A stretch of DNA of 64,000 nucleotides, taken from NCBI GenBank assembly GCA_047495785.1, contig JBLDXI010000020.1, positions 1,984,001 to 2,048,000 of the forward strand. The letters run 5' to 3'. Each line of letters begins with the position of its first letter. Position 1 is the stretch's first letter. The notes below the pieces were generated by a model. It had not been told where the DNA came from and searched no databases. It saw nothing but the letters and a program-made list of their open reading frames with translations. The DNA comes from Lepidodermella squamata. Lineage: Eukaryota; Animalia; Gastrotricha. Positions 5,381 through 60,931 of the stretch are shown piece by piece. A program made the position numbers and the translations under genes.

Positions 5381-5444
5381 CGGGCGAAATCTTGATTTTC
5401 GAACATACCAACATCCTCGCAAGTCAAATTTTCAGCCTTGAAGA

Positions 5445-29160: not shown

Positions 29161-30235
29161 TCATGCGTCTGAATGATTTTCGATCCGTAACATTACGACT
29201 AAATATGGAAAAATGTTCGAAATTTGATGAAAAGATGTAAAATATCTCATTACCGGGATTGTTGTCCCTTGGTTGTTGCGCTCGGTCAAATACTTAGCCA
29301 TAACTTGTTGAATAATGTTCATTCGATCAGAAGCGGACAGGGATGAAAATCCTAGTTTAAGAAAATGAAAAAAATTTGAAATTAATTCAGCAAAAAAATC
29401 ATAATAAATAATGATTATAGGAATGGTCTCAAATTTTCTCCCATTAAAAAACCAAATTTTCCGAACTCCCAACTGACCTCTCTATATATCCTTGACCTGC
29501 CTCATAATATAAAGGGGTGTTTTGATACATTGCATAAAACTAGACGAATCTAAATTCAAAAAATATTAATACCAGGCAGATTATGAGCGAAACTAATGAC
29601 GTCATGCACGAGACCACCCAAGCTGCCTAAAGTCACCATTCCATCGCCAAGCGAAACGCTTTCAAGTAATTGAGGGGCGGATCCTGATGTCGAATCACCG
29701 AAGTCATCAACGCGTGCGACACCTGAGGCCGAATCACTCCTCATACTTGCATCTGATCCGTTCAAACTGCGCCTTATTACATCACGAGCAGGCGATTTTT
29801 TGCTTCCGGTAGATTTCTTAAGATTTGCTTGTGGTTTTGATTTTATCATGCGATCTTAAAAAAATTGAAATTAAATTAAAAAGTTATAGAAATTTGCTTA
29901 AAAATACCAGAAATTCTCATGCCGATTGAGTAGCATTTTTGAAGCCGGCATTTTGGGCAGTTGAGCCTGAGCACGGAGCCTGAACTCGTGAGAACAGCGC
30001 GTTCGCTTGAAATCGAACACCCAGATGACCCTTCGATGCACCGAAGCGAATCCGAGGCCGAATAATTGCGCAGGAAAAACTTTTTACACGCCTCGCAAGC
30101 TTGAACCCCGCATCGGATTCGATTTCCCGTTGGAATATTGCACACCTTGGTAAAAAAAATGAAATAAATTTGATACTAATAAAAAAATCGTCTTACTTTG
30201 CACGTAATTGAAGTATTTTTTAAAATTGAAACCAT
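29161..30235 (-). CDS. Atypical nuclear receptor 1 of the array; LBD apparently truncated or with an unresolved 3' end
   Basis: MVSILKNTSITCK|VCNIPTGNRIRCGVQACEACKKFFLRN...CPKCRLQKCYSIGM, with LBD signature VISFAHNLPG|FSSLSASDRMNII. There is a stop at 29161 and no recognisable WxP/AF-2 exons were found downstream. Confidence 0.75.
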
Positions 30236-30689
30236 TGAAAATCAACGAATTTAGACAATTTCAAAATATATAGGACAGCGAAACAAAATTTCGAACAATT
30301 TTTTTTCAGGACCAGGGACGCATAATTATGACACGGGGCGAGGTACAAGGCACAACTCTCTTCGCGGCTAAACTGTCGCATTAAATTAGCTGTCTCACAA
30401 ATTAGTGTCACTTTTTTGCGGAGAAAACGTACGAAAATATTGACGTCATTTGGCCATGTCTGTGGCGCATAATTTGCGACGCGCTGTCTGAAAAAAATGG
30501 AAGGTGATGTGTACCAATGTCTTCAGTAAAATCATGGACCCCTTGTAAGTCTATATTGATATAATAAAAAGTCGGTGATGATTAAGCGCAAAATAGATGG
30601 ATCTGTCGCAAGTATAAACGGATTATTTCACACGCCCAGACTAAGATGTAATGCCGATGAGGCATTCCTGTAAATAAAAAACATTTCGA

Positions 30690-33058
30690 ACAATTGGTCA
30701 AGCCACATGAATGTTGATTGAAGAGTCTGTTTCAAGCCGATGGCGATGTTAGATGAAGAAAGTGATAGCCGGCACTTCGACCTCCGACGTCTGTGAAGCC
30801 AACTTGGACGTGGGTGGGCGAGATCACGAGTTGGAAAACAACTGAGAAAAAGTATTAGGTCTTTAGCTTTGCAACTTGATTATCGGCACGGCACAGTCAG
30901 CAAGAAAGTAGGTATCCAGCAAAGGGATGACAGCTATTCTTAAAAAATGATTCTATAAGCAGAGGATGAAGAAATTTTTGGGAGAATTATCGAGAACCGT
31001 GGTCAGACTTTTCAGCAGTGACACTTCAGCAAATGAGGGTCAAATCATCACTGACTTTTCATCAGTGACACCTTGTCAGTAAAAAATTCATAAAAATCAT
31101 ATTTTTGTATTAATTTAAATAACTCCTGCAGACAAGTGAGCAGTGACTTTTCAGCAGCGACAAATGAGCAAGTGACACTTCATCAATTTTCATTAATTTA
31201 TCTCGGGCATTGAACTTGCACTTTTTGAGCTCAACTTCAATGCAGCGCATAGTCCCCCTGCTGAATACGGCTGAAATTCTGTTGATGAAATGTCTCCGCT
31301 GAAATGTGACTGCGCAAATGTCACCGAGATAATAAAGATAATAAATTTGGAAAAATTTAGGATAAATTATCAAAAATCACTGCTGACTTGTCACTGATGA
31401 TTTATCTGCTAATGTCGCTGCTCATTTGTCACTGATGAAAAGTCACTGCTCATTTGACCCTCATTTGCTGAATTGTCACTGCTGAAAAGTCTTACAACCA
31501 TTGAGAACAAAGGATTTTATGTCTTTTATTCATTCATTCTTTTAATTAGCTACGAGCGATTGGCAGCAATTTCCAAGTGAATTTGTGTCTCAAGATTTTA
31601 CAAGTTCAATTTTTCATCGAATATTTAATATTTTGGTTCGATTTTTTAAAGGCGCGATTTTGCCTGGTCAAATTAAAGTTTTTCTGTATGCCCAGTTGAA
31701 TTTCATCCTAACTATTAGCTTTCTGCATGGAATTTCCTTATTCAATTTTTTATGATTTGCCACCTGTCTATTTGTCACTCGGAAGACACCCTAAATTGTC
31801 ACTTCCTAATACATTTTCTGAAGAAAAATTAGCTTAGTACGTCAGTAGTTGAAATTGATGAAAATTGTCCGTGGACAATATGTCACTAAAGGATTAAAAC
31901 GCGAGTAAGAAGGTCACTTTGTTGATATGTACGATGGACATCGGCAATGGAAAAGCATTCCTTAAAATTCGCTAAGTAATTGGTGCGGACATGTCTGTCA
32001 TTAGTCAAACAGGGCTGTTATGATAAATGAGAATACTTTCACCTTCGAATTTACAGTTTGAATCACGTCCATCCGAATTAAAGGTACTTTCATCGTCGCA
32101 TTCCTCGCCAAGTCCGGGCTCATTAAAATTGTCATACCATAATGTAAGGTACCCATTGTCTCAGATACGGTCGTCTCAACTCAACTTCTTGATATCGAGA
32201 CAGACCAATTAGTTACAGTCAAGCTTGTGAGTTGAAGAATTTGACCCTGAAATTGAGGTCGTAATGGACGTTTCAGTCAAAGACGAAGTTTGATTTGATG
32301 AATCTTCATTGGATATATCTTAGTATTACAGATAGGTAATTTTTGAAGTAACAGCTGAAGTAAATAACCGTAAATTCCCAAATACAAGCCCAGGCGGCAC
32401 TACAAAGAAGACCGTAATTCAAAATTAAGTAGCAGGCACTGTAAGTGTAACCAGCCACGTGGCAAGCCGCTGAACAGAACAGAAAAACATGTATAAATGA
32501 ATCTGAAAGGAGCAAAGTGAACTTCCAATTCAAACATTGGCATTCAGTTTATGCCTTTAGAGTAATCGGGATTCGAGGAACTAGGGACCTTGTGAATGTT
32601 GGGGTTTTCACCAGCAGATTCCTCTCGATAACGCCTCGGACTTTAGGGGAGCTATAGCCGACTGAATTTTTTGGGGTAACTAGTCAGATCGCTCATCGAT
32701 ATAGCACAGACGCCAATTTTCCCGATTTCTTGAACTTGGTTAGGACGGAACGAATTGAACCCAACAATATATAATTTGACATGATAAGTTCCCGGATGAC
32801 TTTAAAAACTATTTTCCGGCCAAGTTCCCCTATATCGCTGTATTGGTGCCATACATAAGCTTAGCATTGATGTGTTTTCTTTAAACTTACGCGTTGCACT
32901 GCAGTTGTAATTGACGCACCCCGATGCCACAAATTCCTGAAAATTATAAATATAGTTTTTCGAAAATAACTACCGATTCTTTCTTAGGTGTTAGGCACCA
33001 AGTCTGAGAAGACAATGAAAATCCAGTCAGCTAATCCCTGGTAATTTCTCGCGGCCAT
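30690..33058 (-). pseudogene. Degenerate tandem copy of the lectin-mucin-vWA gene
   Basis: Exons 1-3 match the intact gene (MAARNYQGLADWIFIVFSDL|EFVASGCVNYNCSAT|ACHVAGYTYSACY). The CTL domains are largely deleted with stops. A remnant EPGLGEECDDESTFNSDGRDSNCKFEG lies at about 32040-32125, and an indel-ridden vWA remnant at about 30740-30940 matches 34370-34580. Confidence 0.85.
31005..31492. mobile_element. Foldback element with internally repeated CAGTGAC subunits
   Basis: Arms agacttttcagcagtgacacttcagcaaatgagggtcaaat and atttgaccctcatttgctgaattgtcactgctgaaaagtct, with many cagtgac/gtcactg copies pointing inward. Confidence 0.75.
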
Positions 33059-33998: not shown

Positions 33999-36900
33999 TC
34001 AAACTACCGTGTTTAAATATCCAAGAATGGGATAAATGTTCGCCATTAATTGATTAAAATGCTGCAGGACTAGATATTTTATGTTTTCCAGGTTCAGCAT
34101 ATATTCGACTTTTCTAGTAACTGCATTGCTCTCGATGGACAGGATGAACAATCGCCTGGCCAAGTTTTGACTTTGAACCAACGCATCGTGGAAATGCTGA
34201 GTGTCTACAACTTTGGAGGACGTTATGAAAATTGAAACAGCAACAGTGCCGATGCGATGCCCAGAAGTAGGACTGAAAGCCTTCAGATCTGAAATGCGAG
34301 CTATTCCATTGGTCAAATTAGCCGATCCGCCTAGATACAGCATTGATTGAAGGGTCTGGTTCAAGCTGATGGCAATGTTAGATGAAGAAAGTGGTGTCGC
34401 GTGATAGCCTGCACTTCGACCTCCAAAGACAATGAAGCCAACTTGGACCTGGGTGGGCGAGATCAAGAGTTGGGAAACAACTGATCGAAGGTAGGCCTTG
34501 AGCTTAGCAACTTGGATTATTGGCACGGATAAAGATACGTCGATGAGAAAGTAGATATCCAGCAACCGGTTGACAACTGTTGACAAAATTTGCAAAACAC
34601 ATACTCATTAACAAGATGGTTAGGTTGCTATGTTTTACCAAGTTCAACTGATTTTAATTGCGTTGAAAAATCACCCTGAAAAATCCACCCTATACAGGGT
34701 GTCCCAAACGTTGCGCAACTATTTTTTATTTTGCAACTATTTGTAGGAAATTCAACTACCGGGAGAATATTCAACCTTTTATCTGCGGTTTAACGAAAGA
34801 AATTAAAAATTTACCGGAGAAAACCCGGAAACCCCCAATGGTAAGCCAATGATAACTGGTTCAGTAAATTTTGTTATTTTACTCGGTTTGACCAATTTTC
34901 TCCGGACTTTAATAATCCCCATAACAAGTGACATACTTGATTACTATGCTCGTCTATTTTCTTTGCTTGCTTTACTTATGGGACACGCTGTATTAGTGTA
35001 ATCAGAGTTATTCAACAAAGCTAACTAGGGCTATCCTTATTCCTGATATATCCTAAAATGCGACAAAATTAGAGTTCCTGGTCTTTTAGAATAGACAAAA
35101 ACACAGGTTCAATTCAGAACCGTGACATGACTTATCGATGATTATTTACCTTCAAATTGACAATCCACATTGCAACCGTCACCATTAATCGAGTTACCAT
35201 CATCGCATTGTTCTCCTGATAGAGGCTCCAGAACGCCATTGCCGCATTGCCTGCTTGATGACGTGGCTGGGATAGACGCAGTTGTATTCTGTATGACAAA
35301 TGTCGTCGATACTGAATTAGAAGTGGCTGTTGATGTTGTTATCGAGGACGACACTGATGTAGTGCTAGTTGATTGAACTTTCGTAGATTCTGAAGTTGTC
35401 TGGGGTGTTTGCGTTGTCGAAGTTGGTGACGTGGTGGACGTAGAACTCGAAGTCGAGACTGAAGTGCTAGATGAAGTCTGAATTGAAGTTGTGCTCGTTG
35501 GAGCAGCTGTAGGCAGTTCCGTAGTTATAGTAGTTGTCGTGGTTGAAGGGGAGGTTGTCGTAGTACTCGTAGTACTGCTGGACGTTGACGTTGAGACAGA
35601 AGTGCTAGATGAAGTTGTGCTTGTTGGAGCAGTTGTTGTGGTTGTAGTAGTAGTAGATGTGGTGGAAGGCGTGGTTGTAGTAGTAGTCGAAGTTGAGCTG
35701 GTGCTTGTGGTTATCACACTCCCACTAGTTGCAGCCCTCTGACATGCGTATCCATTGTTCCAATTCGACCCATCGCCACTGTTTGTCGACGTCCAGCCGG
35801 TTGTTGAAGAAATCCCATCCTGCACCCCATGAAGTACGCCAGTATCTTTCTGAAGTCGAAACGCAGTATCAGCTGCTCGCGGCATGCCCGCTCCGATGTC
35901 GAGCGCGTCCGACGTTGAAACGTAACTCCCGTCATCCTCCCATCGCCAACCTTGCGCTGTCTTACTAAGCCCTATCCACATGTTAGCTGGGATAGCCAAC
36001 ATAGCCGTTCTAGCTAAAATTAGCGTTGCTTCGTCACGCGGTGTCCAAACGTAAGCACCTAATGTCGAGCAGGCAGACACTGCTGCTGAAAAATTGACCA
36101 AACTGCCAGTGAAGTAATACAAGCATTTGTCCAAAAACTGCCTCCAAGACGTGCTAGGGCAGTCCAAACAGGCCATTGAAAACTCGCAAATGTAGTAATT
36201 TACAGCGGCGAAATCGCTGCCCGGGACAACAGTCCACTGCCCGCCGGACCTAGCAAGACTCGCGATGAATTGCGTCGAGGCTGGAACAGATTGCCAGTAA
36301 AGCCATGATGCTGAAGACTGAACCTGGACGAACGGCCCTATTGGTGGTAGGTAGGTTGGCATGAAGACACCAGTTCGATCCACAGTTATCGGGCTGTTGT
36401 CGAAAAATCGCCAAATCCCGTCTGAATCTGTTACGTAATTCTGCGTCACGTTCCAGACGGAACTCGCGGTTCCAGCGCTACGTCTCGCCCAATCTTGGAT
36501 GCCGAAGAAATAAGATCGAATTACATCCACGCCAGGCAGCGACATGACATAGGCCAACTCGTCTGAGCTGTTTGGAACGAAAAGATGGGCCCCGTTAACT
36601 GAACATGTCTTGGCGGCATTCAAATAATCAGACGTAGTGCTAGATTTGACAATTTGAGCGATAATAATTGAAATTTCGGGAAAATTATCTTACGTCGAAA
36701 TTAAGTAGCAGCTGTCGTAGCAGGCGCTGTAGGTGTATCCAGCCACGGGGCAAGCCGCTGAGTGGAATAGGAAAACAAGTGTAAATAATGACTCTGAAAG
36801 GAGCCAAGTGAATTTCCCGATTCGAAAACTTGGGTTTTTTTGGAATTCATTTTATGCCTTTAGATGAATTCAAGCCTTTTGGAGATTTCGCTTGCAGATT

Positions 36901-38142: not shown

Positions 38143-39789
38143 TTATGTCTTCGAATCTGGATCATCTGCTTTAGGTGGGCTGTTGACTCGAGCGTAGACG
38201 CGACCTTTCGCTGCAAGATCGGGCTTTCGAGCTTTTACCTCGGCGAAAGTGTCCTTGCGGCGGTCTGTTGATGAGATGATGAAAGTCAAAACCTGGGATA
38301 ATTGACTGACGCGACTCTCGACGCAGCTCGGCTCGTTCGGATATTGCTGAGATAAGTAGAGCAGGTGAATTTTTCGAAGCTTATCGCCAATTTCCTGAAC
38401 AACTTCAGTGTTTTTTAGGTTGGGGTGATCTGAAACAATTTGAATTTAATTTAAAAAACTCGCATTTAAAATTGAGGGTCCAGATTTGAATTTTTTTTTT
38501 AAATTTCATGAGCTCACTTCGGAAAACTAGGAGAGCCATCAGGAGGCAATATTCAGCGTTCGAAGGGTCCCATTTATTCAGCATTTTATTGACGTCTTCA
38601 GTTTCACGCTGCATGAACTAAAAAAAATGAAAATTTCAATTTTCAAAAATTTATGAATTTTTAATAAATTGCGCTTACGGAATATTCTGGAAAATGGCGC
38701 ATGAAAGCTTGCGCGTTAACGTTGTTCATACTCATCGGATGTACGGTGTGGCGATTTTGAACGACTGACATGGCACTGCCGCATTGGCCGACCAAAATGC
38801 TGCGATCACTGATATCAAGCCGGTCCAAGTCTGGTACAGCGTCTTGCATGAAGCAACTCGACACATTTCTAACAACTTGTTCGTGATGCTTTATGCCGTT
38901 TATCCAAGCCCTCTCGTCCGTACTAAAATCGAGAATTTCGGTTTTCAATGGAAGCTAAAAAATGATAAAAAGATAGTAATGAAACCACAATAATAATAAA
39001 AAATATTCACAATTTTCAGAATAATTCATAATTTTAGGCAAAGTTTCAAAAAATTAATGGATGGCTAATTAAAAAAGTTTAAAGTCATGTCATCAGAAAA
39101 TTTTATCAGAATCCGTCATCTTATGGTCATCTTGATAATTCTGGAAAATTTCAAAACTTCAAATTCGAAAAAATTATTAAAATTTTCAAACTGCAGAATA
39201 ATAACCTTTTCCATTTTTGAATTGAAATTCCTCCCGGCCGCGGTCACGAGTCTTAAAAAATCCTCATTTGACACCATTTGATGATCAATCGGGCTAGCCA
39301 AAGGTGCTCGTATCAAGCTCGTCGAGCTCAGCGAAGAAGATGATACCCTAGCGGCAGGGCTAATTAAGCCTTCAGTTGAACTACTCGGCTCCGCATTGGT
39401 CGAAATAGTCGCTGTTTTCTTCAGTTTTCGACCAAGATGTCGCATTCCAACAGCCAGGCATTTATCGAGTCGACAACGGGGGCAAACCAGGCGCCAAACC
39501 GTGCCTGAACTAGTCAGAACAGCCCGATCTTTCGAACATGGGCAATCGCGCTGGCCTGATAAACACTGAAGTGCTTCAATTTGGCTGCGATTTCGTTGAA
39601 AAAATTTCTGAAATTTTTTTATTAATTTTTTAATAATTTTAGACATTTAATTTTTACCTTGCAAGCTTCACAGGCCTGAACGCCGCATCGAATGCGGTTG
39701 TCGGTGATCTGATTGCAAACTTTGCAAAGTTGCATCTTTTTACCACTTGGATCGGTGCTGTCTTGAATTTGGCCTCTATCTTCGGTCAT
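38143..39789 (-). CDS. Atypical nuclear receptor 2 of the array, 5 exons
   Basis: MTEDRG...LCKVCNQITDNRIRCGVQACEACK|KFFQRN...CPRCRLDKCLAVGM. LBD exons LPLKTEI...VPDLDRLDISDRSILV...FPEYS|...WDPSNAEYCLLMALLVFR|NHPNL...QQYPNEP...KPDL, ending at TAA 38143. Confidence 0.85.
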
Positions 39790-40822
39790 TTTCAAAAAAT
39801 TCGAAATTGTAATGCACTGTCTTGAATTGAAACGTAATTGGCTTCAGTCGCGCTTCATACTGTCCCCAGTCACAGTTGACATGCTGTAAAATGAAACCTG
39901 GCTTAATTCGACCACAACAACTTGTCTCTATCAATTAGAATCGATGAATCAAGCGTCCATAAAATGTCACGCGAGTCCTGATGTGTCTCAGCTAATCATT
40001 TGATCCCTAGAATGGCGAGGACATTTTATGCGCCTAGACAACGCCACTGATGCGTAACGCGTATAGGTGACAACAAATTAACCCGAATTTTACACTAATA
40101 AACAAAGTCATCGCAAATAAAAATGTCCTCAAAAATCGCAAGTTTTCATGAATTTTGCGCGGGCACCAATTTGACCTCATTGTGGACAATGCAAAATGCG
40201 CTCTCGATTGCGACTCTAAAATGTGGTCACCATGGTGATCTTTGAAAGTTATTGCTTTAGACCTCACAGTGCGATTTCGATGCTCAGATTTTCACTGAAA
40301 TTATTGTCCTCCTTTCATTCATCGTTTTCCCCATAATAACGTCCTCGTAGCTGGATTAATATTGGGTATTTAGTCCGTTCTAAAGACAGTCCCTCGAGTA
40401 GACGTTTTACCTTGACTTAATTAGGCGGAAATGTCTACGCTATATCAAAATTTATTAGTCGTGACCGAATTACGCACGAGAAACGAAAATCCGCCGTAAA
40501 CAAATTAGTCGATTTTTCGAGGCTCAAAATGTTTATTTTTATATCTCCATAATCGCTGAGCAACAACAATGAGCAAGAGAAGCAAAATATCAAACAGATC
40601 GATGATAATAAGAGGAAAGAATTCCGAATCAATCTCTAAAACTATCCTGACAACGTATATCTTCTTATATCACAATTTATAAGGACAATAAGTATCTTTT
40701 ATTTCAGGCTAATTCTATGCAAAGTTAAGGATTTCTATTTTTCTCACCGCTCATTCATCTTTTTGATAATAAAATATACAGATATTTACGATGGGACAGT
40801 CAAGGGCTTGAAAGGGTTCCGA

Positions 40823-43800
40823 TCACCTGGTCATCGCAGAGCCAGGAGATGGCGGCGGCGGTGATCGGTTTTTGTTGCTATTTGTCGAAAAATCGTAAGG
40901 ATGGCAAGTCGGGTTGGTCGCATTTTGAGTAGTATCGGCGACGCTCGACTCGCTGTTCGAGCTAATATTCAACGTATCGCTGCTGCTGTTGCTCCGGTTC
41001 ATGCCCTGACTAGCCCCGTTTGAGTAAACAGTATTATACAACTTATTGCCAACGCCCATTTGTAGAAGGTCCGGTCGCCGTGATCGCAGTGACTCGAATG
41101 ATTCTAGCCGATTTGGGACAGTTGACCGAATTATGTCGGCAACTTGAGATAATTGACGCATTCGAGCTTCGGCAGCTGTTGGATCGTTCGGATACTGCTG
41201 ATTAACCACGGAGTGATGAACAGTGCCCAGTTGCGAAACTATGTCCTGAACTTGAGCGGGATTCGAAAGACCTGGTGCGTCTGAAAACATAAAATTTTCA
41301 ATTGAAAATAAAAAAAATCCAGCTTAAAACAATTTTCAAGATTTTGAAAGGGTAACTTTGGGCACATCAGCTTTGCATGCGAATAGCTTTAAAAAACCGT
41401 ACAGTGAAAGCACAGGGTTTGTTGTTTGAAAGATTTCTATCTTTCGAATTTCCCAAGTCCCAAGGCGATTGAAGCAATTCTCGATTTTTTTTCAATTTTT
41501 GGCGAGACAACTCAAATCCCTCATATCGTCAAAACAATAGATTATTTCGGGTATTCGCATGAAGTTCAGGTGAAAATCGGGTAACCTTGGTTACCAACGC
41601 GGCTTCGAAATCGATTTTCTCAATTTATTTGAAATTAGTTTACTTGATGATCCGCCACCTACTGCTCAAAATTTTTCCGAAATTTGACCCAAGGGTCAAT
41701 AAAAACTAAAAATATGCCAATGCGTATGCAAATGAGCAGCCCAATTTACCTAATAATTGTTTACAAATAGGTATGTTCCATCGCCAAAAATCAGGTAAGA
41801 ATCGAAATATCAGAGATATTCGCAACAAAAATCGGGAATCCCCGTAAGGTTAGGGTTTAGGGATAGGTTTAGTGTTAGAATTGGAATTTTGTTTAAAATA
41901 TCAGAAATTTCTGAATTAACACTCATTTTTAAACCCAAAAAACTTTGTTTTGTGCAAAATTAAGCCAATTCTAAAAGAATTAAAAAGGCCACATCGCTTA
42001 CTTTGATACAACAGCATCGCCATCAGCAAGCTGTATTCGGCTGGAGAAGGGTTCCAAGCGTTCAGAGTTTGGTTGATAGCCGCCGATTCAGGAGCAGAAT
42101 ACTAAAACAAAAATATTCAATAAATTAGTCACAATAGTGATAACACTGAATTTGTTTGATAAAATGTGTAATTTTGTAGCGTGCTTACTGAGAATTCAGG
42201 GAATAATCGTAAAAAATTGGTGGCATTAAGTGAATTCATGCCGAATGGCGCCGGTGCCTGAAGATTTTGCGCGACCGACAGCGGCGATATCGCCTTAGAG
42301 TAAAGAAGGCACCGGTCTTCGGCGCTCAGCTGTTCGAAGCCTGGCAGCTGATGGGCAAAGTTCATCACCGATCGTGAGACCTCGGTATAATGACGCATCG
42401 TATCCTGCCAGGCCTTAGTTTCGTTTGTAAATGAAGCTATATTCGCTCGAAGAGGTAGCTTCAAAAACAAATTATTTAGTGATTTGTTCAAATTTAAACG
42501 ATTTTAGGGTGTTTGAAATGATGGATGATAGGTAGCAAAAACGTTTCATTACCGATTCATAGCGTTGTGAAAGCTCGCGAGCCGCGTGAACAGTGAGATT
42601 CAGCATTTCTTCCTGTCTAGCTCCTTCCAGTGTCATCGGGCTTTTCGGCGTCATTGTTAAAGGCGTTAAAGGCACCGCCGGACCTTGCTGCATCATCGCC
42701 GCCAGCCAGGCTGGGTTCGGCGGCGGCGGCGCCATCGCAACGGGCCGAATCGGTGGTTTACTCGCCAAATCCAGCGGCGTCGGCGGTCCGGCGGCAAGAT
42801 TCGAACCAGACATTTCATTCGACGCTAATAGGCCACTCGAGCCAGCCGCCATGGCCCGCAACAGGTTTTGATGGGCCGGGGTAAGCTGCGCGAAACTCAA
42901 CCCCATCGGCAGCGAGTCCGGGCTGTTTTTGTTCCGGCTACCCGGCCGGCTACCGGGTTTCTTCACATCGGCCGGCGATCGGCGGCTATCACTGCTTTCA
43001 TTCAAGTTACGAGGCGAACTCGACGACGATCGAGTTGTCGAGTCGAAGGAGTCGATATTGCTCGTTGACGGTTGGTCGTTGCTCGAGGCCGATCGGTTCA
43101 GGTTCAAATGCTTTGATTGGTTCGATGATTTCACACTCGCAGATCCAGCTAGGGGTGATTTACTCGTTTTGCGGCCGAGAACTCGCATGCCGACCGCGAG
43201 ACATTTAGTCAGGCGGCATCTAGGGCAAACCAGCCGCCAAACGGTTCCTGAACTCGTCAGGGCAGCTCGGTCGTCCGATAACGGACAGTCGAATGTCCCG
43301 GACACGCATCGCAAGCCATCGGCATTTTCGCGATTTCGTTGAAAAAATTTCTGAGAAAAAAATATAATTAATTTTGCGAAAAATTAATCAATTTTGTATT
43401 GTTCTTGGAACTTGAATTTTGAACACTCTAGGTTGTCTTACGACTGTAACTAATTAGGTATGTCCCCATGTTCCCTTCGAGAATAGGACAGCCTAGAGAA
43501 CACCCAAGCGAAAAATTGCATTAAGAATTGAATTTGGGCAAAATGTTCCGAATGACTCGTTTCGGTCAGTAATTAACAGGGACCTAGTAGGGAAATTATA
43601 GAGGTATACCTTGCAAGCTTCGCATGCCAAAACGCCACATCGGATGCGATTCACGGTAGGCTGATTGCAAACCTATAAATCGTTAGATGAAATAAATTGA
43701 ATAAAAAATGAAATAACTGGTTCATACTTTGCAAAAGACAAGCTCGAAGTTCGACGGTGTTGACGTTTGATTGACCATTATTTTATTGCTAGTAGCACCA

Positions 43801-43856
43801 GAGTCTGAATTCGCTTCGACTGTTTCACTTTTTTCTTCTTGATCGACACCAGTCAT
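40823..43856 (-). CDS. Atypical nuclear receptor 3 of the array, 6 exons
   Basis: MTGVDQ...FCK|VCNQPTVNRIRCGVLACEACK|KFFQRN...CPRCRLTKCLAVGM. LBD signature VMNFAHQLPGFEQLSAEDRCLL, then WNPSPAEYSLLMAML and a last exon DAPGLSNPAQVQ. Confidence 0.9.
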
Positions 43857-48382: not shown

Positions 48383-50862
48383 TTAGCCATTTTCAGTTTT
48401 TATATTGGCAATTTCTTTGCTTTTCTGCTTCGACGAATGTATTTCACTGTACAGCTTATTCATCGCGAGCAAATGGGGACATCGCTGAGTCATCCGCTTG
48501 AAGGAATCAACCCGACGGAAAGACGCCTCCCGCAACTTGATCAACGCGACCATCATTCGATTTCGTCGATCAGCAATGGCACTGGAATCGAAATTCTGGC
48601 TGAGATAAGCCTCGTAAGATTTCTTGAGTCGGCTAATTGATTCTTCGATTTTAGCAGGATCGATTAGCAGCGGATCGGGTTGGTAAAACAGAAAGGCTAG
48701 GAGATAGCCGAACTCAGCCTGAGACATTGGCGGTTTCCAGTCATGGAACATTGACCAAAGATCACGAGCCTCTGGAACTGCATACTTTGATAGGGAAATA
48801 ATTGTAAAAAATGTTTAGAAAATTTTGAAGCGTACAGAAAATTCTGGGAAATTGTGCAATAATCCAACTAAATTATTGCTCGAAATTCCAAAACTGCAAG
48901 GCTCTCCTTGTTGGTAATTACTATCAGCAGCCAAAATCGATGAAATCGAATTTGAGAAGAGGACACAACGATCCCTGACGTCAATGTCCTTATAGCCTGT
49001 CAAAAATGAGATCAAATAATAATGAATTTCGAGCGAAAAAATGGTTGTCCGAAACCGGGTAATAATCGCGAGAAATCGGTCACGTGACGCGCAATGCACT
49101 CGAATTGATGCATCGATGTCAACCAGGCGGTGACTTGATCGCTGAAATCGCCAATGTTTACTTTGAGAGGCAGAGAAGCGAGGGCGTGGCGGATAAAGCC
49201 GCCGGCATTCGCGACAAACGTCAAATTCTCCTCAGCTTCGTGGCTTTCTGATTGAATCGGGTTGCGGATAATTCGATCACCAGTATTTATCCGTTTGCGA
49301 TTTTCTGAAGAGGGATCCTTTTTCGCGGCTATACTTTTCCTTCCTAGAAGATCATAATTCAGCCCAATTAAATATCAATGAGGTGCTTGGTTTGATTTAA
49401 TTTACCTTGAATTCGCATTCCAACCTGCAAACATTTCCGGAAGCGACAACGTGGGCAAGAAAATCTAAGGGTAAAACGCAGAATTTGAAGTAAGGTTGCT
49501 GTTTAATGTAAATTACCGCCAAACCGCTCCAGTTCCGGTGACTACGGCACTTTCGTCGCTTTCAACCGGGCAGTCATTGGTTCCAGAAAAGCAGCACAAA
49601 GAGGCCTCGGATTTACGATTTCGAAGGTAGAAGCGCTAAAAGAATAGGAATAAATTATGATCGTAAGCACAAATGCAAGATCCAAATTTGTTACATTATT
49701 TCCGCTACTGGTATGTCTATTTATGCAGCCGAAGATTGAAATGGAATCAATATTGGCCTATGCCATATACCTGAGGAGCTAACTACGACACTTTGACACG
49801 TGGAATATTTCTGATATTGGATAATTATATTTTCAAATTGACCGTTGACAAGTGAAAAGTGGGGCTTATCGAAATTGTTGACATCGTGAAATGTTGATGC
49901 CACTTTCAAGATCAACGAACGAGGAGTCGAACAATATCAAAAAGAGGTTGATAGTCATCTCAGAGTTACTGATGAGGTTACTGATGGAATCAAGCTACAG
50001 CTTCCGCGTCAACCTAAATCGATAAAACCCTTTTCGACGACACTTTGTTGTCTTTTGAGCTGGATGGGAGTATGAAAATTCAAACTTCTCAAGAAAAAAC
50101 TGAGTAAGTACATCTAGGATTCCGAGAATCGACCATCTTCAAGCCAATATACACATTTTTCCATATGCAGGAAAATACAGAAAAAAGCGTTTGGCCACTT
50201 TTCACTTGTTGACGGTCAATTTATAATTCTATTTAAAATCGATATCGGCTCGTCGGGAAAAAATTCGGGAAAAACGTAATATCAATGAAAAAATTCGAAA
50301 ACTGATAGTTTTGTGCCAGTTTTTGAAATCTTTTATTTCATTCGAATCCGGTTTCTCTAAAAAATATTTCTCTAAAAGAAATTATCTAAAAAATACAATA
50401 GTGAATTAAAATTCGAATCCTTGGAAGAAAAACAGAATTTTGGACAGCAATTGATATAGGGTGGTGGGATATAAAATTAAGGCGGGCTCTCAACTAATTA
50501 TTCCTCCAGTTATCACACCAAAATCAGAACTCGGAGTCATTCAACCGCAAATTAAACATTTTGATGGTTTCCTAAAAATTCAAACTTATACCTTGCAAGC
50601 TTCGCAAACCATTGCCCCGCATCGAACTTGCTTTGAAGTCGGCAAATTGCATACCTTGATATAGGTTATTTTACTTTTAAGAAATAGATTCTAACATTTT
50701 GTAACTTACTTGGCACTTCACATTGGTAATAGTGCTACCATCCTCTTCCGGCTTACTCCCATTGTTTTTCCAAGCGCTTTCGCGCCCATCTTCATCGCTC
50801 GCTTCAGTCATCGCGTCATACAAATCCTCTTCGTCTCTCAATAATTCGAGCAGGCTATACAT
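48383..50862 (-). CDS. Atypical nuclear receptor 4 of the array, 7 exons
   Basis: ...VKCQ|VCNLPTSKQVRCGAMVCEACK|RFYLRN...GAVWR|FSCPRCRFRKCLQVGM. LBD signature VTDFSRLLPG|YKDIDVRDRCVLF, then WKPPMSQAEFGYLLAFLFYQP and AF-2-like KLYSEIH. Confidence 0.88.
49836..50221. mobile_element. Intronic foldback/MITE-like element
   Basis: aaattgaccgttgacaagtgaaaagtgg and ccacttttcacttgttgacggtcaattt. Confidence 0.6.
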
Positions 50863-51316
50863 CACCTGCTGTCACTATTTATCGGCTTTCGAACCGCGGA
50901 CAAATGAAAAATTAGATTACTTTACAAGGTGTTGATCGAATTCCTAAGCTGATGATGATGTTAATTATTCTTCGTAGTAAATGCAATGCTTCTTCTTAGC
51001 ATTTTCATTCAATAAACGTCAACATCTGATAATATATAATGTGACCGTGACCTAAAAAGACCACTTCTCATAGCAATTATGAGTCCTACTTTTATCACGC
51101 ACGTGCTGTCTGCGGGTTTCGTCTAGAAAAAATATGTTCCATCAAAATAATAGAATAGGTAGAAGTGACAAAAAAATTTAGAAATTTCCAGCCAATTATT
51201 TATTTTCAAGTAAATATATAACATCAAATTTATACACGTCTAAAACATTGCAATAAATTCGAAAAACTCGAAACTGAAAGAAATGAATATAAACTGATTT
51301 TTCCAGGTCTTTGATT

Positions 51317-53942
51317 TCACTCCAGTTGTTCCACCCCATCGTTGTTAGCGTTCGTTGCTAATGATAGAATTTCCTGTAGCATTTTGTTGCTATTTGTCGC
51401 TTGCGGCAAACGGCTGCACATAATGCCCGTCGCATGGGTCATTCGAGGAGTTGCTTCCATAAGTTTAACGACCGCATGCTGCATCAGAGCCATGCGAGAG
51501 CGCGCGATTTCTCTGTCGCCAGATGAATTTTGAGCTAAATAGGCGGCGTACGTGGCGTAGAGCTGCCGAACGTGAGCATGCAACTGGCTTCTGTCCATGG
51601 TAGACGAAGAACCCTCGCCTGAACATCGGAAAAAATTAGTGAAATTTCAATATTTGCTGACCTACATTTTTCAGGTTCAAGTTCACCGTTTTGAAATATC
51701 AGGAAAGCAAACAGGAAAGATAGATCGACTTTCGAAGGTTTCCAGTGATTGAAAAATTGAGCTGCATCAGCCGCCTCTTTTTGAAGGTACTGCAAAAAAT
51801 GAGAAAATTAAATTGAAATTGAAGAATTTTCATTTTTTGCTCGACATTTTTCAAATTAATTAAAAATAATAATTCAATTAATAATTGAAAAATTAATTTG
51901 AAAAATTATTAAATCTGGGTAATCCTAATAAAAAGCTGAGCAATATTTTGCATTTGAAAATTTCTTGGCCAAAATTTCTAATTTTTTTGAAGCTATATCC
52001 TTCAAGTTATACCGAAAATTCCGGTAGATAGGTGACCAGTTGAGTAACGCCATCCGGACTGATGTTGCAGCAGTAGGCTGGACCTTTTAAGCTTGCGGAG
52101 CTAGCAACGTTTAATGCTGGAAGGGCTAGTGACAACAGCTGGCAGCGATCCAGCAACGGCAGTGAGGTGAAGCCTGGAACTTGCTTCGTATAAGCCATGA
52201 CAGAGACGGCTATCTTTTCGAAATGCGGCATGAGCGTGCCGATGGCTGAGAAAGTGTCGCGAAAGTAGCCTCTGAATTCACTCAATGGGAGATCGCGTAA
52301 ATTTTCGGTCAAATCCGAGCCAGCATGAACGATAGCAGTTATCGTATTTTCGGCGATTGGGCATTCGCGGTGAATCGGGTATTTTACGAGCTGATCGTTT
52401 GACACTTTGACCAGTGAAGTTCGCTGCTCTTCACTAGAGGGCGATTTCGCTTTGGTGAGAATATAAAGGATACAAAACTTAAGAATGGAATCCTGTATAT
52501 TATGCTCATTTTGAGAACTAAGCTTTAGTCTGAAGAGCCATTTTTATCGATGTCTTTCATCGATTTTACAAATCAGGGATTTTTCTGATCAGCAATCAGC
52601 ATTCTGGGAAACCAACCAAGAAAAAGGTCATGCATGGGGCTAAAAAATTAAATAAAAAATGACAGGGTTATAAAAAATAGAGTGCGTCTGCTCGTACATA
52701 CAATATATGTATGCGATTTTTGCTGCTCGTACATATTATATTCGAGTACAAATATAGAATTTCAGCCTTGTACTCAATTTTGACCCGGCAAGTTTATTTT
52801 TTGAGGGCAAATGCCTTTAAAATAGGGTTAGACTCACCGGCAAATTTTTACCGGCCCATCGGTTTTGGTTCCTGATATTACAGACTTAGGGTATTTTCGA
52901 TTTTCAGGATGGCTAATATGAATATTTACCCCATGCATGCTAAACTTTGAGGGGAGGTTGGTCACGCAATTGCACGCAAAAGTCGATGCAATTATGATTA
53001 AAATTTGGAACATTTGCGATCAAAATTGATCAATCCGTACAAATTCAAAGTTAAGTATAAATAATTTTGAAATATATGTACGATTAGCAAAAATCCCGTA
53101 CATATTATATATGTACGAGCAGCCATTCCGTAAAAAATAAGAAAGGGAACTGTGAAATTTGAGAAACTTGAAAAAAGTTTAGTTCTAGGGCCTCAATTTC
53201 ACTAATGAATTAAGAAATAAAAAATCGCATTAAAAAATTCTCTGCGATTACTTATCGTCGATATTAGCTTTTTGACCCACTTTCAATTTTCAAACGAGGA
53301 GGACAGAAAGGATCATCTTCTCGCAATCACGTCATGATTGAGATCTTTTGAATTCAAGTGAAAAAGATCTTGTAAGGAGGAAATCTTGCTGTGAATCATA
53401 AGAAAAATCATTACGAAAATTTCAAAAATTCTAGAAAATTCCAGAACTCAAAGATACGGGCAATAGAAAGTCGCGCACGTTTTCAGCACTGAAGAAACTG
53501 CAAAAAATTAGCGCAAATTAGGTCCCTACAAGTATTTTAGCAGAGGAATCCTTTCCCAGCCCATTTTACAGGAATCGTTGACGAATTTATGGGCGCATAT
53601 AAAATAATTACGTTTTCCGCTGTGAAGCAGTTCGACCTGTTGGCATTTTACGTAGCGGCAAAGCGGGCAGAGGGATCTCCAAACCGAACCGGCATTCGTC
53701 AACGTTGAATTGACGTTGCTATCTATCAAACACTGATTCTGGCCGGTTAAGCACCGCAAAGACGTTGATCCTTTGATGCATCGCAATTGAAATCTCTTGA
53801 TTAAAAATTTGATTCCAATTAAAAAATTAAACTCTTGGAATTGTGTACATACCTTGCATGCCTCACACATCGGAACCTTGTAACGCCGCCTGGTCAATAC
53901 CAGTTGACAGACCTCGCAAAAGTTCATGCTTTGGTTGGACAT
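51317..53942 (-). CDS. Atypical nuclear receptor 5 of the array, 5 exons
   Basis: MSNQSMNFCEVCQLVLTRRRYKVPMCEACK|RFQLR...CPLCRYVKC. LBD signature VMAYTKQVPGFTSLPLLDRCQLL, then WKPSKVDLSFLFAFLIFQ and AF-2-like KMLQEIL. Confidence 0.88.
52688..53121. mobile_element. Intronic foldback/MITE-like element
   Basis: ctgctcgtacatacaatatatgtatgcgatttttgct and agcaaaaatcccgtacatattatatatgtacgagcag. Confidence 0.65.
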
Positions 53943-55411: not shown

Positions 55412-55518
55412 TATCGCAACATGGAAAATACCGCGAAATTAGCGCCCAGACCACGATCCCGCGTCCTGACTCAAAAATGGATGTGATTCTAGGAATTTAC
55501 GGTGAAATAAAAGGTATA

Positions 55519-57337: not shown

Positions 57338-58450
57338 ATGTTATCGATTATTTTTCTATCAGGTATTTTATTCCAACCCGCATTCTCTTATGCGAACACG
57401 TCATCGATGCAGAGGGCTCGACGCCTTCTGTCGCTTTGTCCCCACCTCAGTGCCGAAAGCCCGGGCCCAATATGTGAAAATTGCTCAAGAGTAAACGTAA
57501 AAATTATCTCATACACCGCAACAGTTGGTGCCATCAACGATCAGCTACAAAGTTTCTCGGCAACAATGGATTTCAAAATACACTGGGATGGTTCGTGCAA
57601 CTGGCCAACTGTCGCTGCAAAGCTCAAAAACTCGGAAAAAGTGACATTTCCGGTTCACGATTCCATTTTCTGGCGGCCTAAATTTATCCATCTCAACCCA
57701 TTCGTAACTCACATGAGCGACAGCAACGCCGCAAGAATAAGCGTGGTAATCAGGCCTGATGGTGTCTTTTTTGTCTGGCTGTTCATGGTTAAACTAACGT
57801 CAACTTGCGATCTAAATGTGGCAATGTTCCCATTTGATACTCAAATTTGCAGTATCAAACTTAAAATCGCCACTCATCAGAGAAGGTTCTATAATCTGGT
57901 ATCTTCCGGAGGCACGTATGCTTACGGGCTTTTCGAGCACAATATTGACAATTGGCTAATCGTCGACAGATCAGCTACGGTCAGCAATAGGACGACTTAC
58001 AAGTATTCAATCACATTTCGGAGGAAACCGGCGTTTTACATGTGGAATCTCATTCTACCATTTGTTGTTCTGACATTCCTGGTATTCATCGTCCTAATCT
58101 TGGAACCTCGTCTGTCCGACCGGCCAGTTCTGGCTGTAACAATACTCTTAGCTCTCGTTTTCATGGAAGCCGACTCTCTGAAATATCTGCCGTTGAAACC
58201 TGGCTTCATTATGATGTCTGTATTCATGAAATGTTGCCAATTTAACACCTGCTTTATAACATTTTATTGCTTGGTCACTTGCGGGTTAGCTAACTCTTAC
58301 CCTGATTGGTATGACACTATTCTGCTCGAGAATTCGTTCTTCAAACTTGGAAATGGCCGTGCCTTGGATATTGCTGCTTTTACCATTCTTCTATTGGCCT
58401 ACGGTGTCTGCTTTGCATTCTTTTTACTTGTGCTGTTTTCTAATACTTAA
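57338..58450 (+). CDS. Divergent nicotinic-acetylcholine-receptor-like Cys-loop ligand-gated ion channel subunit, intronless
   Basis: Signal peptide, FWRPKF (loop A region), Cys-loop CDLNVAMFPFDTQIC, pre-M1 FRRKPAFYMWNLILP, four TM segments and a very short M3-M4 loop. No vicinal Cys in loop C. Confidence 0.9.
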   Translation: MLSIIFLSGILFQPAFSYANTSSMQRARRLLSLCPHLSAESPGPICENCSRVNVKIISYTATVGAINDQLQSFSATMDFKIHWDGSCNWPTVAAKLKNSEKVTFPVHDSIFWRPKFIHLNPFVTHMSDSNAARISVVIRPDGVFFVWLFMVKLTSTCDLNVAMFPFDTQICSIKLKIATHQRRFYNLVSSGGTYAYGLFEHNIDNWLIVDRSATVSNRTTYKYSITFRRKPAFYMWNLILPFVVLTFLVFIVLILEPRLSDRPVLAVTILLALVFMEADSLKYLPLKPGFIMMSVFMKCCQFNTCFITFYCLVTCGLANSYPDWYDTILLENSFFKLGNGRALDIAAFTILLLAYGVCFAFFLLVLFSNT

Positions 58451-59325: not shown

Positions 59326-60030
59326 GCGATATGTAGCGGTGACCTAGTTTGCCGTGACCTTGTAAACTCGAGCACTCATCGATGTCCTTATTCGAGACGC
59401 AAGAGATCTTTTAATTTCCTAAATCGAAAGCCATCCATGTATCATGGTCATCAATGAAAAAAGTAATTCTATGAATAAGGAAAAATAGGCGATCAGAGCC
59501 GTATAAGTGGGCAGATGCGGGGTAAAATTTGCCCGCATATATAACGAAGACTGAACAGTGATTCATATTGCTCAGGGACGTTCAATGCACTAATTATTAT
59601 AATGATCAATTTACAAACTAAAATAAGGCGCCAGGCATTCAAGTAATCGCGAGCCACGGGGGAGGGAGGTCCAATGTCCGTCTACGCAATTTTCGTAGTG
59701 CGTGACTATATGCGAGGTCATTTCTTTCATGCCGCCTCACGCATTTTAATATCCACTAAAAATTAAGTCTTATGTACAGAACTTTTACTTTTTTCATTAG
59801 CTGGTTCGGAATATTTCACACAGACGACAGATTTCGTTCAAAAAATAAAGAAATTAAAAAATATTTATAACATCAAGTTGAGACATGAGATTTAAAAATT
59901 GAAAAAGTCGAACCTAAAAAATATCGCCGAGAGAGACAAGAAAATAATTTCTTGAAAGACCATGCAAGTGTCTCAACATATTTACGAATATAATAATTAA
60001 AAGACCGGATGAGCAGGTAAAAAAAGCTGG

Positions 60031-60931
60031 TTATTTTTCAACATTTCCAGGGCTGACGAAGATGTTGCTTTTTGAGCTTTGTTCTGAAATCAAAAGCGGG
60101 GTTCATTAAATAAGTTAATCAGTGACGTGAAGGATTTCGAACCTTGGTAAAACACTGCGGCAAACAAAAAATTAGCTATTTCTTCAACAGACGGCTTCCA
60201 GTATTGACTCAACTCGGGAGATGAGCTTGCCACAAAATTATTCTAGGGAAAATAATTTAGTAAAATATAAAATTCGATAAATCATTGTTACCAATTGTAT
60301 GTAATTGTTGTAGCTTGGGAAATGAAGCTGATCGGGCAAATTCATCGTCGATTGGGCGAGATTGTTTGACGGAGAAGAAAACGCACTTGCGGGCTTGTTA
60401 TTGTCATCGCTGTTGCGCCGTTTCATCAAAATCGCATCCGCATCGGCTGAAGTCGCTGAAAATGACTTCAACGGCGTTCTCACTATAATACCGGCAAAAT
60501 TATATCGTAAAATTCATTAAATTTATGCTGTACCTTGTGTATTCATTTCTACGGCCTGGCATTTCGTGAACCGACATTTGGGACACATGACTCGAAGCAC
60601 AGAGCCAGCTTTTGACAAAGCAAATTCATCATTGGCAAGCCCGGATAGGCAATCATTTCGGCCTGTGAAACATTGAAGTTCGTCCGTACCTTTACAATTT
60701 CTTAAGTAAAATCGCTGCGAAAATTTGAAATTGTTTAAGGAGGATTTTTTTCAAGGTTAACGAATTTACTTTGCAAGCCTCGCAAATTGGAGCCTTATAA
60801 CGCCGCTTGGTTGTTACCGCAATTTTGCAAACCTGTATTAGACAAATCCAATTATTATATTAGCTCGAAATGTTTTTTTTTACTTGGCAGTTGAAGCAGG
60901 ATTTGACCTCGGCAGTTTGCATGGGATTCAT
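60031..60931 (-). CDS. Atypical nuclear receptor 6 of the array with an internally deleted and truncated LBD, 6 exons
   Basis: MNPMQTAEVKSCFNCQ|VCKIAVTTKRRYKAPICEACK|RFYLRN...CPKCRFTKCQAVEM. A short hinge is spliced in phase to YWKPSVEEIANFLFAAVFYQ and then a ~17-aa last exon. No LPGF signature exon is present. Confidence 0.75.

What the first reader, a model, noticed from the sequence alone, without database searches (positions are those of the whole stretch)
29161..60931. Tandem array of six atypical nuclear receptors with a remodelled DNA-binding domain
Seen: six same-strand, multi-exon NR genes that the ORF track shows only as fragments. Zinc finger 2 is C-x6-C-x19..21-C-x2-C in all six, with a conserved inserted block (RAVLTSSGSVLR, RAVLTSSGTVWR, RAALTSSGTVWR, SAVVTGTGAVWR, STLTNAGSVWR, FALSKAGSVLR). 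Finger 1 has a 14-residue loop in five of six, and the usual HYG is replaced by RCG or RYK. Established: the canonical spacing is C-x2-C-x13-C-x2-C and C-x5-C-x9-C-x2-C, and the D-box region controls dimer geometry. Inference: a lineage-specific, possibly undescribed NR subfamily whose conserved insert forms a new dimerisation or DNA-contact element, expanded locally in the manner of nematode supplementary NHRs.
Basis: partly seen in the sequence, partly recalled or inferred. Interest (0 to 1): 0.9.

Follow-up and report, generated by a model that had tools for sequence, protein, structure and literature searches.

The report
Nuclear receptors with extended second finger
Six neighbouring genes encode gene-switch proteins (nuclear receptors) whose second DNA-gripping zinc finger carries a conserved extra loop; they belong to a large family (about 60 genes in this animal) that I found described nowhere and that looks like a one-grip offshoot of the rare two-grip receptors.

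Summary
Six minus-strand, multi-exon nuclear-receptor (NR) genes lie at 29.2-60.9 kb. All have a second zinc finger of C-x6-C-x19..21-C-x2-C, the quoted insert peptides, and a 14-residue first-finger loop in five of six.

Copies 2, 3 and 4 give intact 398, 605 and 382 aa proteins with DBD and LBD. Copy 5 is intact apart from one unresolved junction. The LBDs of copies 1 and 6 are only partly found. A spliced transcript contig confirms three introns of copy 3 and shows that the insert is retained; copy 2 is also transcribed. The finger exon is under purifying selection (dN/dS 0.09-0.19).

The six are not a private local invention. About 60 such finger exons are scattered in clusters over this genome. 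About 70 protein clusters in public data share the extended finger; the ten I checked were all unnamed metagenome proteins. Two AlphaFold models place the insert as a beta-hairpin (low to moderate confidence) just before the second-finger helix, not in the D-box.

P-box (CEACKK), DBD tree and LBD profile all point to the two-DBD receptors (NR7) as nearest kin. The hairpin's role is untested. The scan has noted other NR expansions elsewhere in this genome. Verdict: a real, apparently undescribed variant of a known kind.

The parts
29197..30235 (-). Copy 1, partial model. Exons 30235-30197, 30145-29908, 29854-29573, 29351-29197. DBD plus the N-terminal half of the LBD; the C-terminal LBD exons were not found.
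   Evidence: Pfam zf-C4 36.6 bits
29933..30040 (-). Copy 1 second zinc finger, C-x6-C-x19-C-x2-C, insert ...RAVLTSSGSVLR
   Evidence: AlphaFold model of this DBD shows a hairpin AVL / TSSGS / VLR
38143..39789 (-). Copy 2, complete 398-aa NR. Exons 39789-39658, 39607-39206, 38954-38679, 38617-38518, 38429-38143.
   Evidence: The 251-bp intron 39205-38955 is confirmed by an RNA contig joint, and contig 39442-39580 covers the finger
39458..39565 (-). Copy 2 second zinc finger, x6/x19, insert RAVLTSSGTVWR
40823..43856 (-). Copy 3, complete 605-aa NR. Exons 43856-43728, 43672-43610, 43350-42553, 42458-42189, 42101-42002, 41280-40823. Long low-complexity hinge.
   Evidence: Spliced 1392-nt contig X1 record 6 confirms introns 43727-43673, 43609-43351 and 42552-42459
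43201..43308 (-). Copy 3 second zinc finger, x6/x19, insert RAALTSSGTVWR, inside exon 3
   Evidence: dN/dS 0.19 against the paralogue on contig C4
48383..50862 (-). Copy 4, complete 382-aa NR. Exons 50862-50710, 50654-50592, 49635-49517, 49464-49406, 49247-49056, 48996-48836, 48784-48383. Splice sites are predicted, not RNA-confirmed.
   Evidence: Run X1 holds 26% of the words of 48383-53942, a hint only
49431..49593 (-). Copy 4 second zinc finger, x6/x20, insert SAVVTGTGAVWR, split by a 52-bp intron (49516-49465)
51317..53942 (-). Copy 5. DBD exons 53942-53853 and 53795-53612; LBD exons 52405-52013, 51789-51687 and 51618-51317. All are open; the junction between DBD and LBD (about 1.2 kb) is unresolved.
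53643..53753 (-). Copy 5 second zinc finger, x6/x20, insert STLTNAGSVWR; GM motif after the finger replaced by VEL
60093..60931 (-). Copy 6. DBD exons 60931-60884, 60832-60770 and 60714-60534, plus an LBD-like remnant at 60242-60093 (...YWKPSVEEIANFLFAAVFYQ). No full LBD was recognised, so it may be degenerate.
60559..60672 (-). Copy 6 second zinc finger, x6/x21, insert FALSKAGSVLR

Best explanation
These are six members, at least three or four of them intact and at least two transcribed, of a large lineage-restricted subfamily of nuclear-receptor transcription factors. Each has one DBD, a hinge and an LBD. The DBD keeps all eight zinc-binding cysteines and the recognition helix. [quoted passage not shown] The second finger carries a conserved 10-12-residue insert between Cys6 and Cys7, with consensus ...[S/T]-x-x-G-x-[V/I]-W-R-x-x-C. 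The insert is predicted to form a beta-hairpin just before the second-finger helix. Shown here: gene structure, expression of copies 2 and 3, retention of the insert in mRNA, purifying selection, family size and the NR fold. Inferred: the family arose from an NR7-type ancestor by loss of the second DBD. Also inferred: the proteins bind AGGTCA-like half-sites through the P-box helix. Also inferred: the hairpin, with its invariant Arg three residues before Cys7 where canonical DBDs touch the phosphate backbone, adds a DNA-backbone or partner-contact surface that changes response-element geometry.
For: Six DBDs with conserved cysteines and the insert. zf-C4 hit. A profile of full-length relatives aligns over DBD and LBD to RXR-alpha (E 5e-19), with a 13-residue gap in RXR exactly at the insert. 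A spliced RNA contig confirms three copy-3 introns and carries the insert; copy 2 is also transcribed. dN/dS of the finger exon is 0.19 (copy 3 against its paralogue) and 0.09 (copy 2 against copy 3). About 60 such exons in the genome. 108 public representatives match the finger profile, and 64 aligned DBDs have Cys6-Cys7 spacings of 17-25 with R at -3 in 63/65, G in 62/65 and W in 48/65. Two AlphaFold models both give a hairpin at the insert, and Foldseek hits are NR DBDs only. NR7 affinity: the DBD tree splits {family + all 2DBD-NR first DBDs} from the rest at 97/89 support, with this genome's own 2DBD-NR first DBD nearest. The family LBD HMM scores 55-56 bits on a cestode 2DBD-NR and on a hemichordate protein whose single DBD groups with 2DBD-NR second DBDs, against 30 bits or less on all other NRs sampled. 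[quoted passage not shown]
Against: Hairpin confidence is only pLDDT 54-67. No DNA-bound model or binding data exist, so the hairpin's role is inference. The DBD tree uses 67 columns, and its references cover NR1, NR2 and 2DBD-NRs only; NR3/ERR (P-box EACKA) and NR4-6 were not sampled. Divergent sequences can attract each other in such a tree. A mollusc 2DBD-NR LBD scores only 21.5 bits. Pfam LBD hits are below threshold on single proteins. The LBDs of copies 1 and 6 are incomplete. The copy 4-6 models lack read-level RNA support.
Confidence: 0.6

Rival explanations
1. The family is an independently diverged NR lineage, for example from an NR1, NR2 or ERR-like ancestor in the manner of nematode supplementary NHRs. 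[quoted passage not shown]
For: The tree rests on few columns and on limited reference sampling. The ESM Atlas places the copy-1 DBD nearest to nematode NR clusters. Against PDB, the best DBD-only chain for the family profile is ERR-gamma by a small margin. Copies 4-6 and most metagenome relatives have other P-boxes (CEACKR, CQACKS, CSACGS).
Against: Three independent signals agree on NR7: the P-box in copies 1-3, the starred tree split at 97/89, and an LBD HMM score nearly double that of any other sampled NR. The genome's HNF4-like DBD (L002) sits far from the family in the tree.
Confidence: 0.25
2. The insert is a tolerated structural loop. The Trp packs on the zinc module and the Gly makes a turn. 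It gives no new DNA or partner contact, and the proteins act like ordinary monomeric or dimeric orphan NRs.
For: Insert length varies from 17 to 25 residues between Cys6 and Cys7 across the family, and only G, W and R are conserved. Model confidence at the hairpin is low. The homodimer prediction gave no answer (not evidence either way).
Against: The insert has been kept in every one of about 130 family DBDs seen, with no reversion to x9. It is under purifying selection. It sits next to the residues that contact the phosphate backbone and the DR-type dimer interfaces in canonical DBDs (established knowledge of GR, ER and RXR DBD structures).
Confidence: 0.3
3. The six loci are decaying pseudogene relics of an NR expansion and have no present function.
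For: The LBDs of copies 1 and 6 could not be completed. Copy 5 has lost the GM motif after the finger. Copies 4, 5 and 6 have no read-level RNA evidence.
Against: Copies 2, 3 and 4 have complete open frames with canonical GT-AG introns. Copies 2 and 3 are transcribed and spliced. dN/dS is well below 1. No DBD exon of any copy has a stop or frameshift.
Confidence: 0.05

Closest known systems
Two-DBD nuclear receptors (2DBD-NR, subfamily NR7), first DBD, group A
   Same: P-box CEACKK followed by FF-x-RN in copies 1-3. HYG is lost in this lineage's own 2DBD-NR first DBD, whose second finger is already slightly lengthened (x11-12). The DBD tree groups the two, and the LBD profile scores best on 2DBD-NR LBDs.
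   Different: Only one DBD is present (RNA-confirmed for copy 3). The second finger is x6/x19-21 instead of x5/x9, and the first-finger loop is 14 residues. Copies 4-6 have CEACKR.
Nematode supplementary nuclear receptors (HNF4-derived supnrs)
   Same: A large lineage-specific expansion in tandem clusters, fast-diverging DBDs with unusual P-boxes, and weak Pfam LBD scores.
   Different: There is no affinity to the genome's HNF4-like DBD in the tree. I found no paper reporting a long conserved insert between Cys6 and Cys7 in supnrs; their own spacing was not examined here. The host's own 2DBD-NR is closest to flatworm and mollusc proteins, not nematode ones.
Parasitic flatworm HR96b with the CHC2 second finger (C-X6-C-X9-H-X2-C; PMC8363021)
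   Same: A remodelled second zinc finger with a six-residue D-box region in a spiralian NR.
   Different: HR96b keeps x9 and replaces a Cys with His. Here all four cysteines are kept and x9 becomes x19-21.
Canonical NR DBDs (RXR, RAR, GR, ERR; solved structures)
   Same: Same fold (Foldseek TM up to 0.85 on the target). Eight cysteines, a recognition helix, the C-x2-C-R-x2-K-C second helix, and an Arg three residues before Cys7.
   Different: A 10-12 residue hairpin insert before the second helix, a D-box region longer by one residue, a first-finger loop longer by one residue, and no HYG.
Four-residue inserts between the two fingers of corticoid/mineralocorticoid receptor DBDs (abstracts of PMC10446182 and bioRxiv 10.1101/2024.03.14.585051, seen)
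   Same: A natural insertion inside an NR DBD that changes transcriptional output.
   Different: Those are four-residue inserts. Per the abstracts the human MR one arises by alternative splicing, and lamprey CR1 and CR2 differ only by theirs. Here the insert is constitutive, 10-12 residues long, inside the second finger, and defines a whole family.

Membership tests
Nuclear receptor superfamily | zf-C4 DBD: two modules of four cysteines with a recognition helix after Cys3-Cys4 | tested here: met
   All eight cysteines are present in all six copies. PF00105 scores 36.6 bits on copy 1. AlphaFold models match only NR DBDs.
Nuclear receptor superfamily | Canonical spacing C-x2-C-x13-C-x2-C and C-x5-C-x9-C-x2-C | tested here: not met
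   The first-finger loop is 14 residues (13 in copy 5). The second finger is x6 and x19-21. This is a departure in spacing, not in fold.
Nuclear receptor superfamily | C-terminal ligand-binding domain (Hormone_recep fold) | tested here: met
   The family profile aligns to RXR-alpha, RAR, HNF4 and PPAR across DBD and LBD (E 5e-19). LBD exons are found in copies 2-5. Pfam PF00104 gives only 17-22 bits on single sequences, below its 23.5-bit cut-off. The LBDs of copies 1 and 6 are incomplete.
Nuclear receptor superfamily | AF-2 helix (hydrophobic-hydrophobic-x-E-hydrophobic-hydrophobic) at the LBD C-terminus | tested here: inconclusive
   Copy 5 has ...KMLQEILS and copy 4 has ...KLYSEIH. Copies 2 and 3 lack the Glu. 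No LBD structure model was made.
2DBD-NR (NR7) | Two DBDs in tandem before one LBD | tested here: not met
   Copies 2, 3 and 4 have one DBD in a complete frame. The spliced RNA contig of copy 3 runs from exon 1 into the LBD exon with no second DBD.
2DBD-NR (NR7) | P-box CEACKK in the first DBD, stated to be unique to 2DBD-NRs (PMC1810520) | tested here: met
   Copies 1-3 have CEACKK; copies 4-6 have CEACKR. Literature.
2DBD-NR (NR7) | Phylogenetic grouping of DBD and LBD with NR7 members | tested here: inconclusive
   The DBD split {family + 2DBD first DBDs} has 97/89 support. The LBD HMM scores best on a cestode 2DBD-NR and a hemichordate relative (55-56 bits, against 30 or less for others). 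However, NR3-NR6 references are missing and a mollusc 2DBD-NR scores low.
Nematode supnr (HNF4-derived) | Descent from HNF4 (NR2A) | tested here: not met
   The genome's HNF4-like DBD (L002, P-box CDGCKG) lies among NR2 sequences, far from the family.
Flatworm HR96b CHC2 type | C-X6-C-X9-H-X2-C second finger | tested here: not met
   The family has Cys, not His, at that position, and x19-21, not x9.

The most novel reading that the evidence does not exclude
The hairpin is a new functional element of the NR DNA-binding domain. It would be a backbone, minor-groove or partner-contact module that arose when an NR7-type receptor lost its second DBD, and it would give this roughly 60-gene family response-element geometries that no canonical NR uses. 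The family would then be the first recognised single-DBD branch of NR7.
Probability: 0.3. Interest if true: 0.7.

Novelty: new variant of a known kind. Interest (0 to 1): 0.55.

Why it matters
The NR DBD is one of the most rigidly conserved DNA-binding modules in animals, and its x5/x9 second finger is used as a search filter in NR surveys (for example the methods of PMC1810520). A large, expressed, selected family that keeps the fold but adds a conserved hairpin shows that the module can take a sizeable addition. Because Pfam scores sit at or below threshold, such genes are easily missed. The family also offers a natural experiment on how half-site spacing and dimer geometry are set. If the link to NR7 holds, it shows what becomes of two-DBD receptors when one DBD is lost. 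All of this is directly testable with DBD constructs with and without the hairpin.

Tried and rejected
(1) Homodimer prediction of the DBD returned no answer. It is not evidence for or against dimerisation.

(2) A word-indexed homology search with a profile of ten full-length relatives found only the seeds and one weak nematode hit, so it gave no named relatives.

(3) A cluster look-up of ten representatives found only ENA metagenome members, with no names or accessions. Contigs encoding P0002 gave no organism.

(4) Naming the host failed. Earlier notes guess 'rotifer'. However, the genome's own 2DBD-NR is closest to a cestode (46%) and a mussel (41%) protein, and no rotifer protein appears among the hits. 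I leave it as an unidentified, probably spiralian, small-intron animal.

(5) A degenerate DNA pattern for an ERR-type P-box (CEACKAFF) found nothing in the genome, so no NR3 reference could be added to the tree.

(6) The LBD exons of copies 1 and 6 and the hinge junction of copy 5 could not be completed by similarity.

(7) The idea that these are mis-modelled 2DBD-NRs was rejected by the RNA contig and the complete frames.

(8) The idea that the insert is an unspliced intron was rejected: it is in the mRNA contig and is conserved at the protein level.

(9) The tardigrade C4 zinc-finger paper is not relevant. It reports 36-57 genes and canonical motifs.

(10) Spliced proteins of the window could not be passed to the search and fold tools by reference. 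A metagenome orthologue (P0002, 53% identical to copy 3 over 140 residues; it groups with copies 2 and 3 in the DBD tree) and the contiguous copy-1 DBD were used instead.


Full report
OBSERVATION

A six-frame scan of the window finds six nuclear-receptor (NR) second-finger modules, all on the minus strand. They lie at 30040-29933, 39565-39458, 43308-43201, about 49593-49431, 53753-53643 and 60672-60559.

The first finger is C-x2-C-x14-C-x2-C in five copies and x13 in copy 5. HYG is replaced by RCG (copies 1-4) or RYK (copies 5 and 6). Pfam zf-C4 scores 36.6 bits on the only copy whose DBD is almost contiguous, copy 1. Canonical NRs of the same genome keep x5-7/x9. The spacing is therefore a property of this family.

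GENE MODELS AND EXPRESSION

Introns are short GT-AG introns, mostly 50-260 bp. I built the models by paralogue-guided splicing.
- Copy 2 (39789-38143) gives 398 aa.
- Copy 3 (43856-40823) gives 605 aa.
- Copy 4 (50862-48383) gives 382 aa.
- All three are complete, with DBD, hinge and LBD.
- Copy 5 has open DBD and LBD exons, but the junction across about 1.2 kb is unresolved.
- Copies 1 and 6 have intact DBDs, but only part of an LBD could be recognised.

A public run that behaves as RNA (X1) has no coverage in the intergenic stretch 39637-40782, and its contigs cross GT-AG introns. It holds a 1392-nt contig that joins 43918-43726, 43670-43610, 43350-42553 and 42458-42198. These are exactly my introns 1-3 of copy 3, and the insert-coding part of exon 3 is retained. 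The same run has a contig over the copy 2 finger (39442-39580) and the 251-bp copy 2 intron joint. X1 also holds 26% of the sampled words of 48383-53942, where copies 4 and 5 lie. That is only a hint.

SELECTION

dN/dS for the finger exon is 0.19 between copy 3 and its paralogue on contig C4 (dS 0.46). It is 0.09 between copies 2 and 3, where dS is saturated.

HOW BIG IS THE FAMILY

One finger exon used as a query finds 51 matches in the genome. A profile of 31 such exons finds about 60 with the extended length. They lie in clusters on at least ten contigs, and Cys6-Cys7 spacings of 18-23 were seen directly in about 35 of them. The genome has at least 153 zf-C4 matches in all.

The same profile searched against 1.84 billion representative proteins gives 108 hits at E of 0.001 or better. 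In 64 aligned DBDs the counts are as follows.
- The Cys5-Cys6 distance is 6 in 58.
- The Cys6-Cys7 distance is 17-25, never 9.
- Arg stands three residues before Cys7 in 63 of 65.
- A Gly stands in the turn in 62 of 65.
- Trp stands before the Arg in 48 of 65.

All ten representatives I looked up are unnamed ENA metagenome proteins. Contigs of the closest one carry ordinary animal genes such as kinesin, C2H2 zinc-finger and family-C GPCR genes.

The six genes are thus one old cluster of a widespread family. Copy 3 is closer to the C4 paralogues (81-85% in the exon) than to its neighbour copy 2 (75%). A metagenome protein from another organism (P0002) groups with copies 2 and 3 in the tree. Unrelated genes sit between the copies: a VWA gene, a C-type lectin/mucin gene and a Cys-loop channel gene.

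FOLD AND POSITION OF THE INSERT

A profile of ten full-length relatives aligns over DBD and LBD to RXR-alpha (E 5e-19), RAR, HNF4-alpha, PPAR-gamma and GR. HMMER opens a 13-residue gap in RXR between LIDKR and QRNRC, which is after the D-box and before Cys7.

I made two AlphaFold2 models: the orthologue-like P0002 DBD (pLDDT 76) and the window's own copy 1 DBD (pLDDT 73). Both show the recognition helix, the second-finger helix and, at the insert, a two-stranded hairpin. In P0002 it is AAL / TVSGA / VWR; in copy 1 it is AVL / TSSGS / VLR. Local pLDDT there is 54-67. Foldseek returns only NR DBDs.

KINSHIP

Copies 1-3 have the P-box CEACKK followed by FF-x-RN. [quoted passage not shown] This genome's own 2DBD-NR (locus L007) has a first DBD with CEACKKFFMRNY, no HYG, and a second finger already lengthened to x11. 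Its metagenome relative has x12.

I built an IQ-TREE of 80 DBDs over 67 columns.
- The family separates from all canonical DBDs at 99/95 support.
- The split {family + all six 2DBD-NR first DBDs} against all other DBDs, 2DBD second DBDs included, has 97/89 support.
- The L007 first DBD is nearest to the family.

An HMM of the family's LBDs scores 55.8 bits on the Mesocestoides 2DBD-NR. It scores 55.1 bits on a Saccoglossus protein whose DBD groups with 2DBD second DBDs. It scores 30 bits or less on E78, E75, HR3, RAR, NR1D, EcR/LXR and NR2C1, and only 21.5 bits on a Mytilus 2DBD-NR.

There are caveats. The tree has few columns, no NR3-NR6 references were available, and divergent rows may attract each other. 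I rate the NR7 affinity at about 0.6.

MECHANISM (INFERENCE)

The proteins should act as sequence-specific transcription factors that read a half-site with the P-box helix. Alvite et al. propose AGG(C/G)CA for the EAK triad of EACKK (PMC6844482). The hairpin emerges next to the conserved Arg at the position where canonical DBDs contact the phosphate backbone. That region also forms part of direct-repeat dimer interfaces in RXR-type DBDs (established structural knowledge, not tested here). It most likely adds a backbone, minor-groove or partner contact. It may instead be purely structural. A homodimer prediction gave no answer.

LITERATURE

Full-text searches turned up nothing that describes a long conserved insert between Cys6 and Cys7, or single-DBD receptors with the NR7 P-box. 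The searches covered inserts in the second finger, rotifer and flatworm NRs, the EACKK P-box and C-X6-C. The nearest reports are the flatworm CHC2 finger and four-residue inserts in corticoid-receptor DBDs. Other readers of this scan have noted further NR expansions elsewhere in this genome. I did not test those.

VERDICT

This is a real, expressed, selected and apparently undescribed NR subfamily with an extended second finger: a new variant of a known kind, not a new kind of system.

Noticed in passing
Public proteins P0003 (878 aa), P0006 (875 aa), P0049 (876 aa); also P0001 (991 aa): Single open frames from metagenome contigs carry five or six complete NR-type DBD units (first and second finger) in tandem. 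That is well beyond the two of 2DBD-NRs. P0001 has ten second-finger helix motifs and no first fingers. They could be multi-DBD receptors, or read-through of tandem arrays by a prokaryotic gene caller.
   Followed up: partly
window 57338-58450 (+): An intronless 370-aa open frame with a Neur_chan_LBD domain (56 bits) and a hydrophobic N-terminus. It is a Cys-loop channel gene lying between NR copies 5 and 6.
   Followed up: partly
window 35142-36623 (-) and 33999-34595 (-): A 493-aa open frame with a C-type lectin domain, a long Thr/Ser mucin-like tract and a DUF4215 tail. Next to it is a 198-aa VWA-domain open frame. Both lie between NR copies 1 and 2.
   Followed up: partly
L031 and L032 (G000:C4:582000-599500), L033 (C4:991500-999500): Three close paralogues of copy 3 on another contig. 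Two form an inverted pair about 9 kb apart. In L031, exon 3 is interrupted by about 3.2 kb (4294 to 7537), possibly an inserted element.
   Followed up: no
window 49636-50591 and 41281-42001: Copy 4 has a 956-bp intron and copy 3 a 721-bp intron, ten times the usual 50-90 bp in this locus. They may hold inserted repeats.
   Followed up: no
window 38300-44000, run X2: The DNA run X2 holds, besides near-identical contigs, a second set of contigs 5-10% divergent over copies 2 and 3 (25 of 53 laid contigs are 90-95% alike). This fits a divergent haplotype, a homeologue or the C4 paralogues.
   Followed up: no
G000 contigs C25/C26, C15/C105, C28/C33, C26/C49: Many zf-C4 matches come in pairs with identical scores on two different contigs. 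This suggests large duplicated or uncollapsed regions in the assembly.
   Followed up: no
G000:C54:2.52-2.67 Mb: A very dense run of more than 40 zf-C4 matches on one strand. Its first-DBD-like units have yet another finger shape, for example CEACRKFYSRHK...C-x-C. It is not the family studied here.
   Followed up: partly
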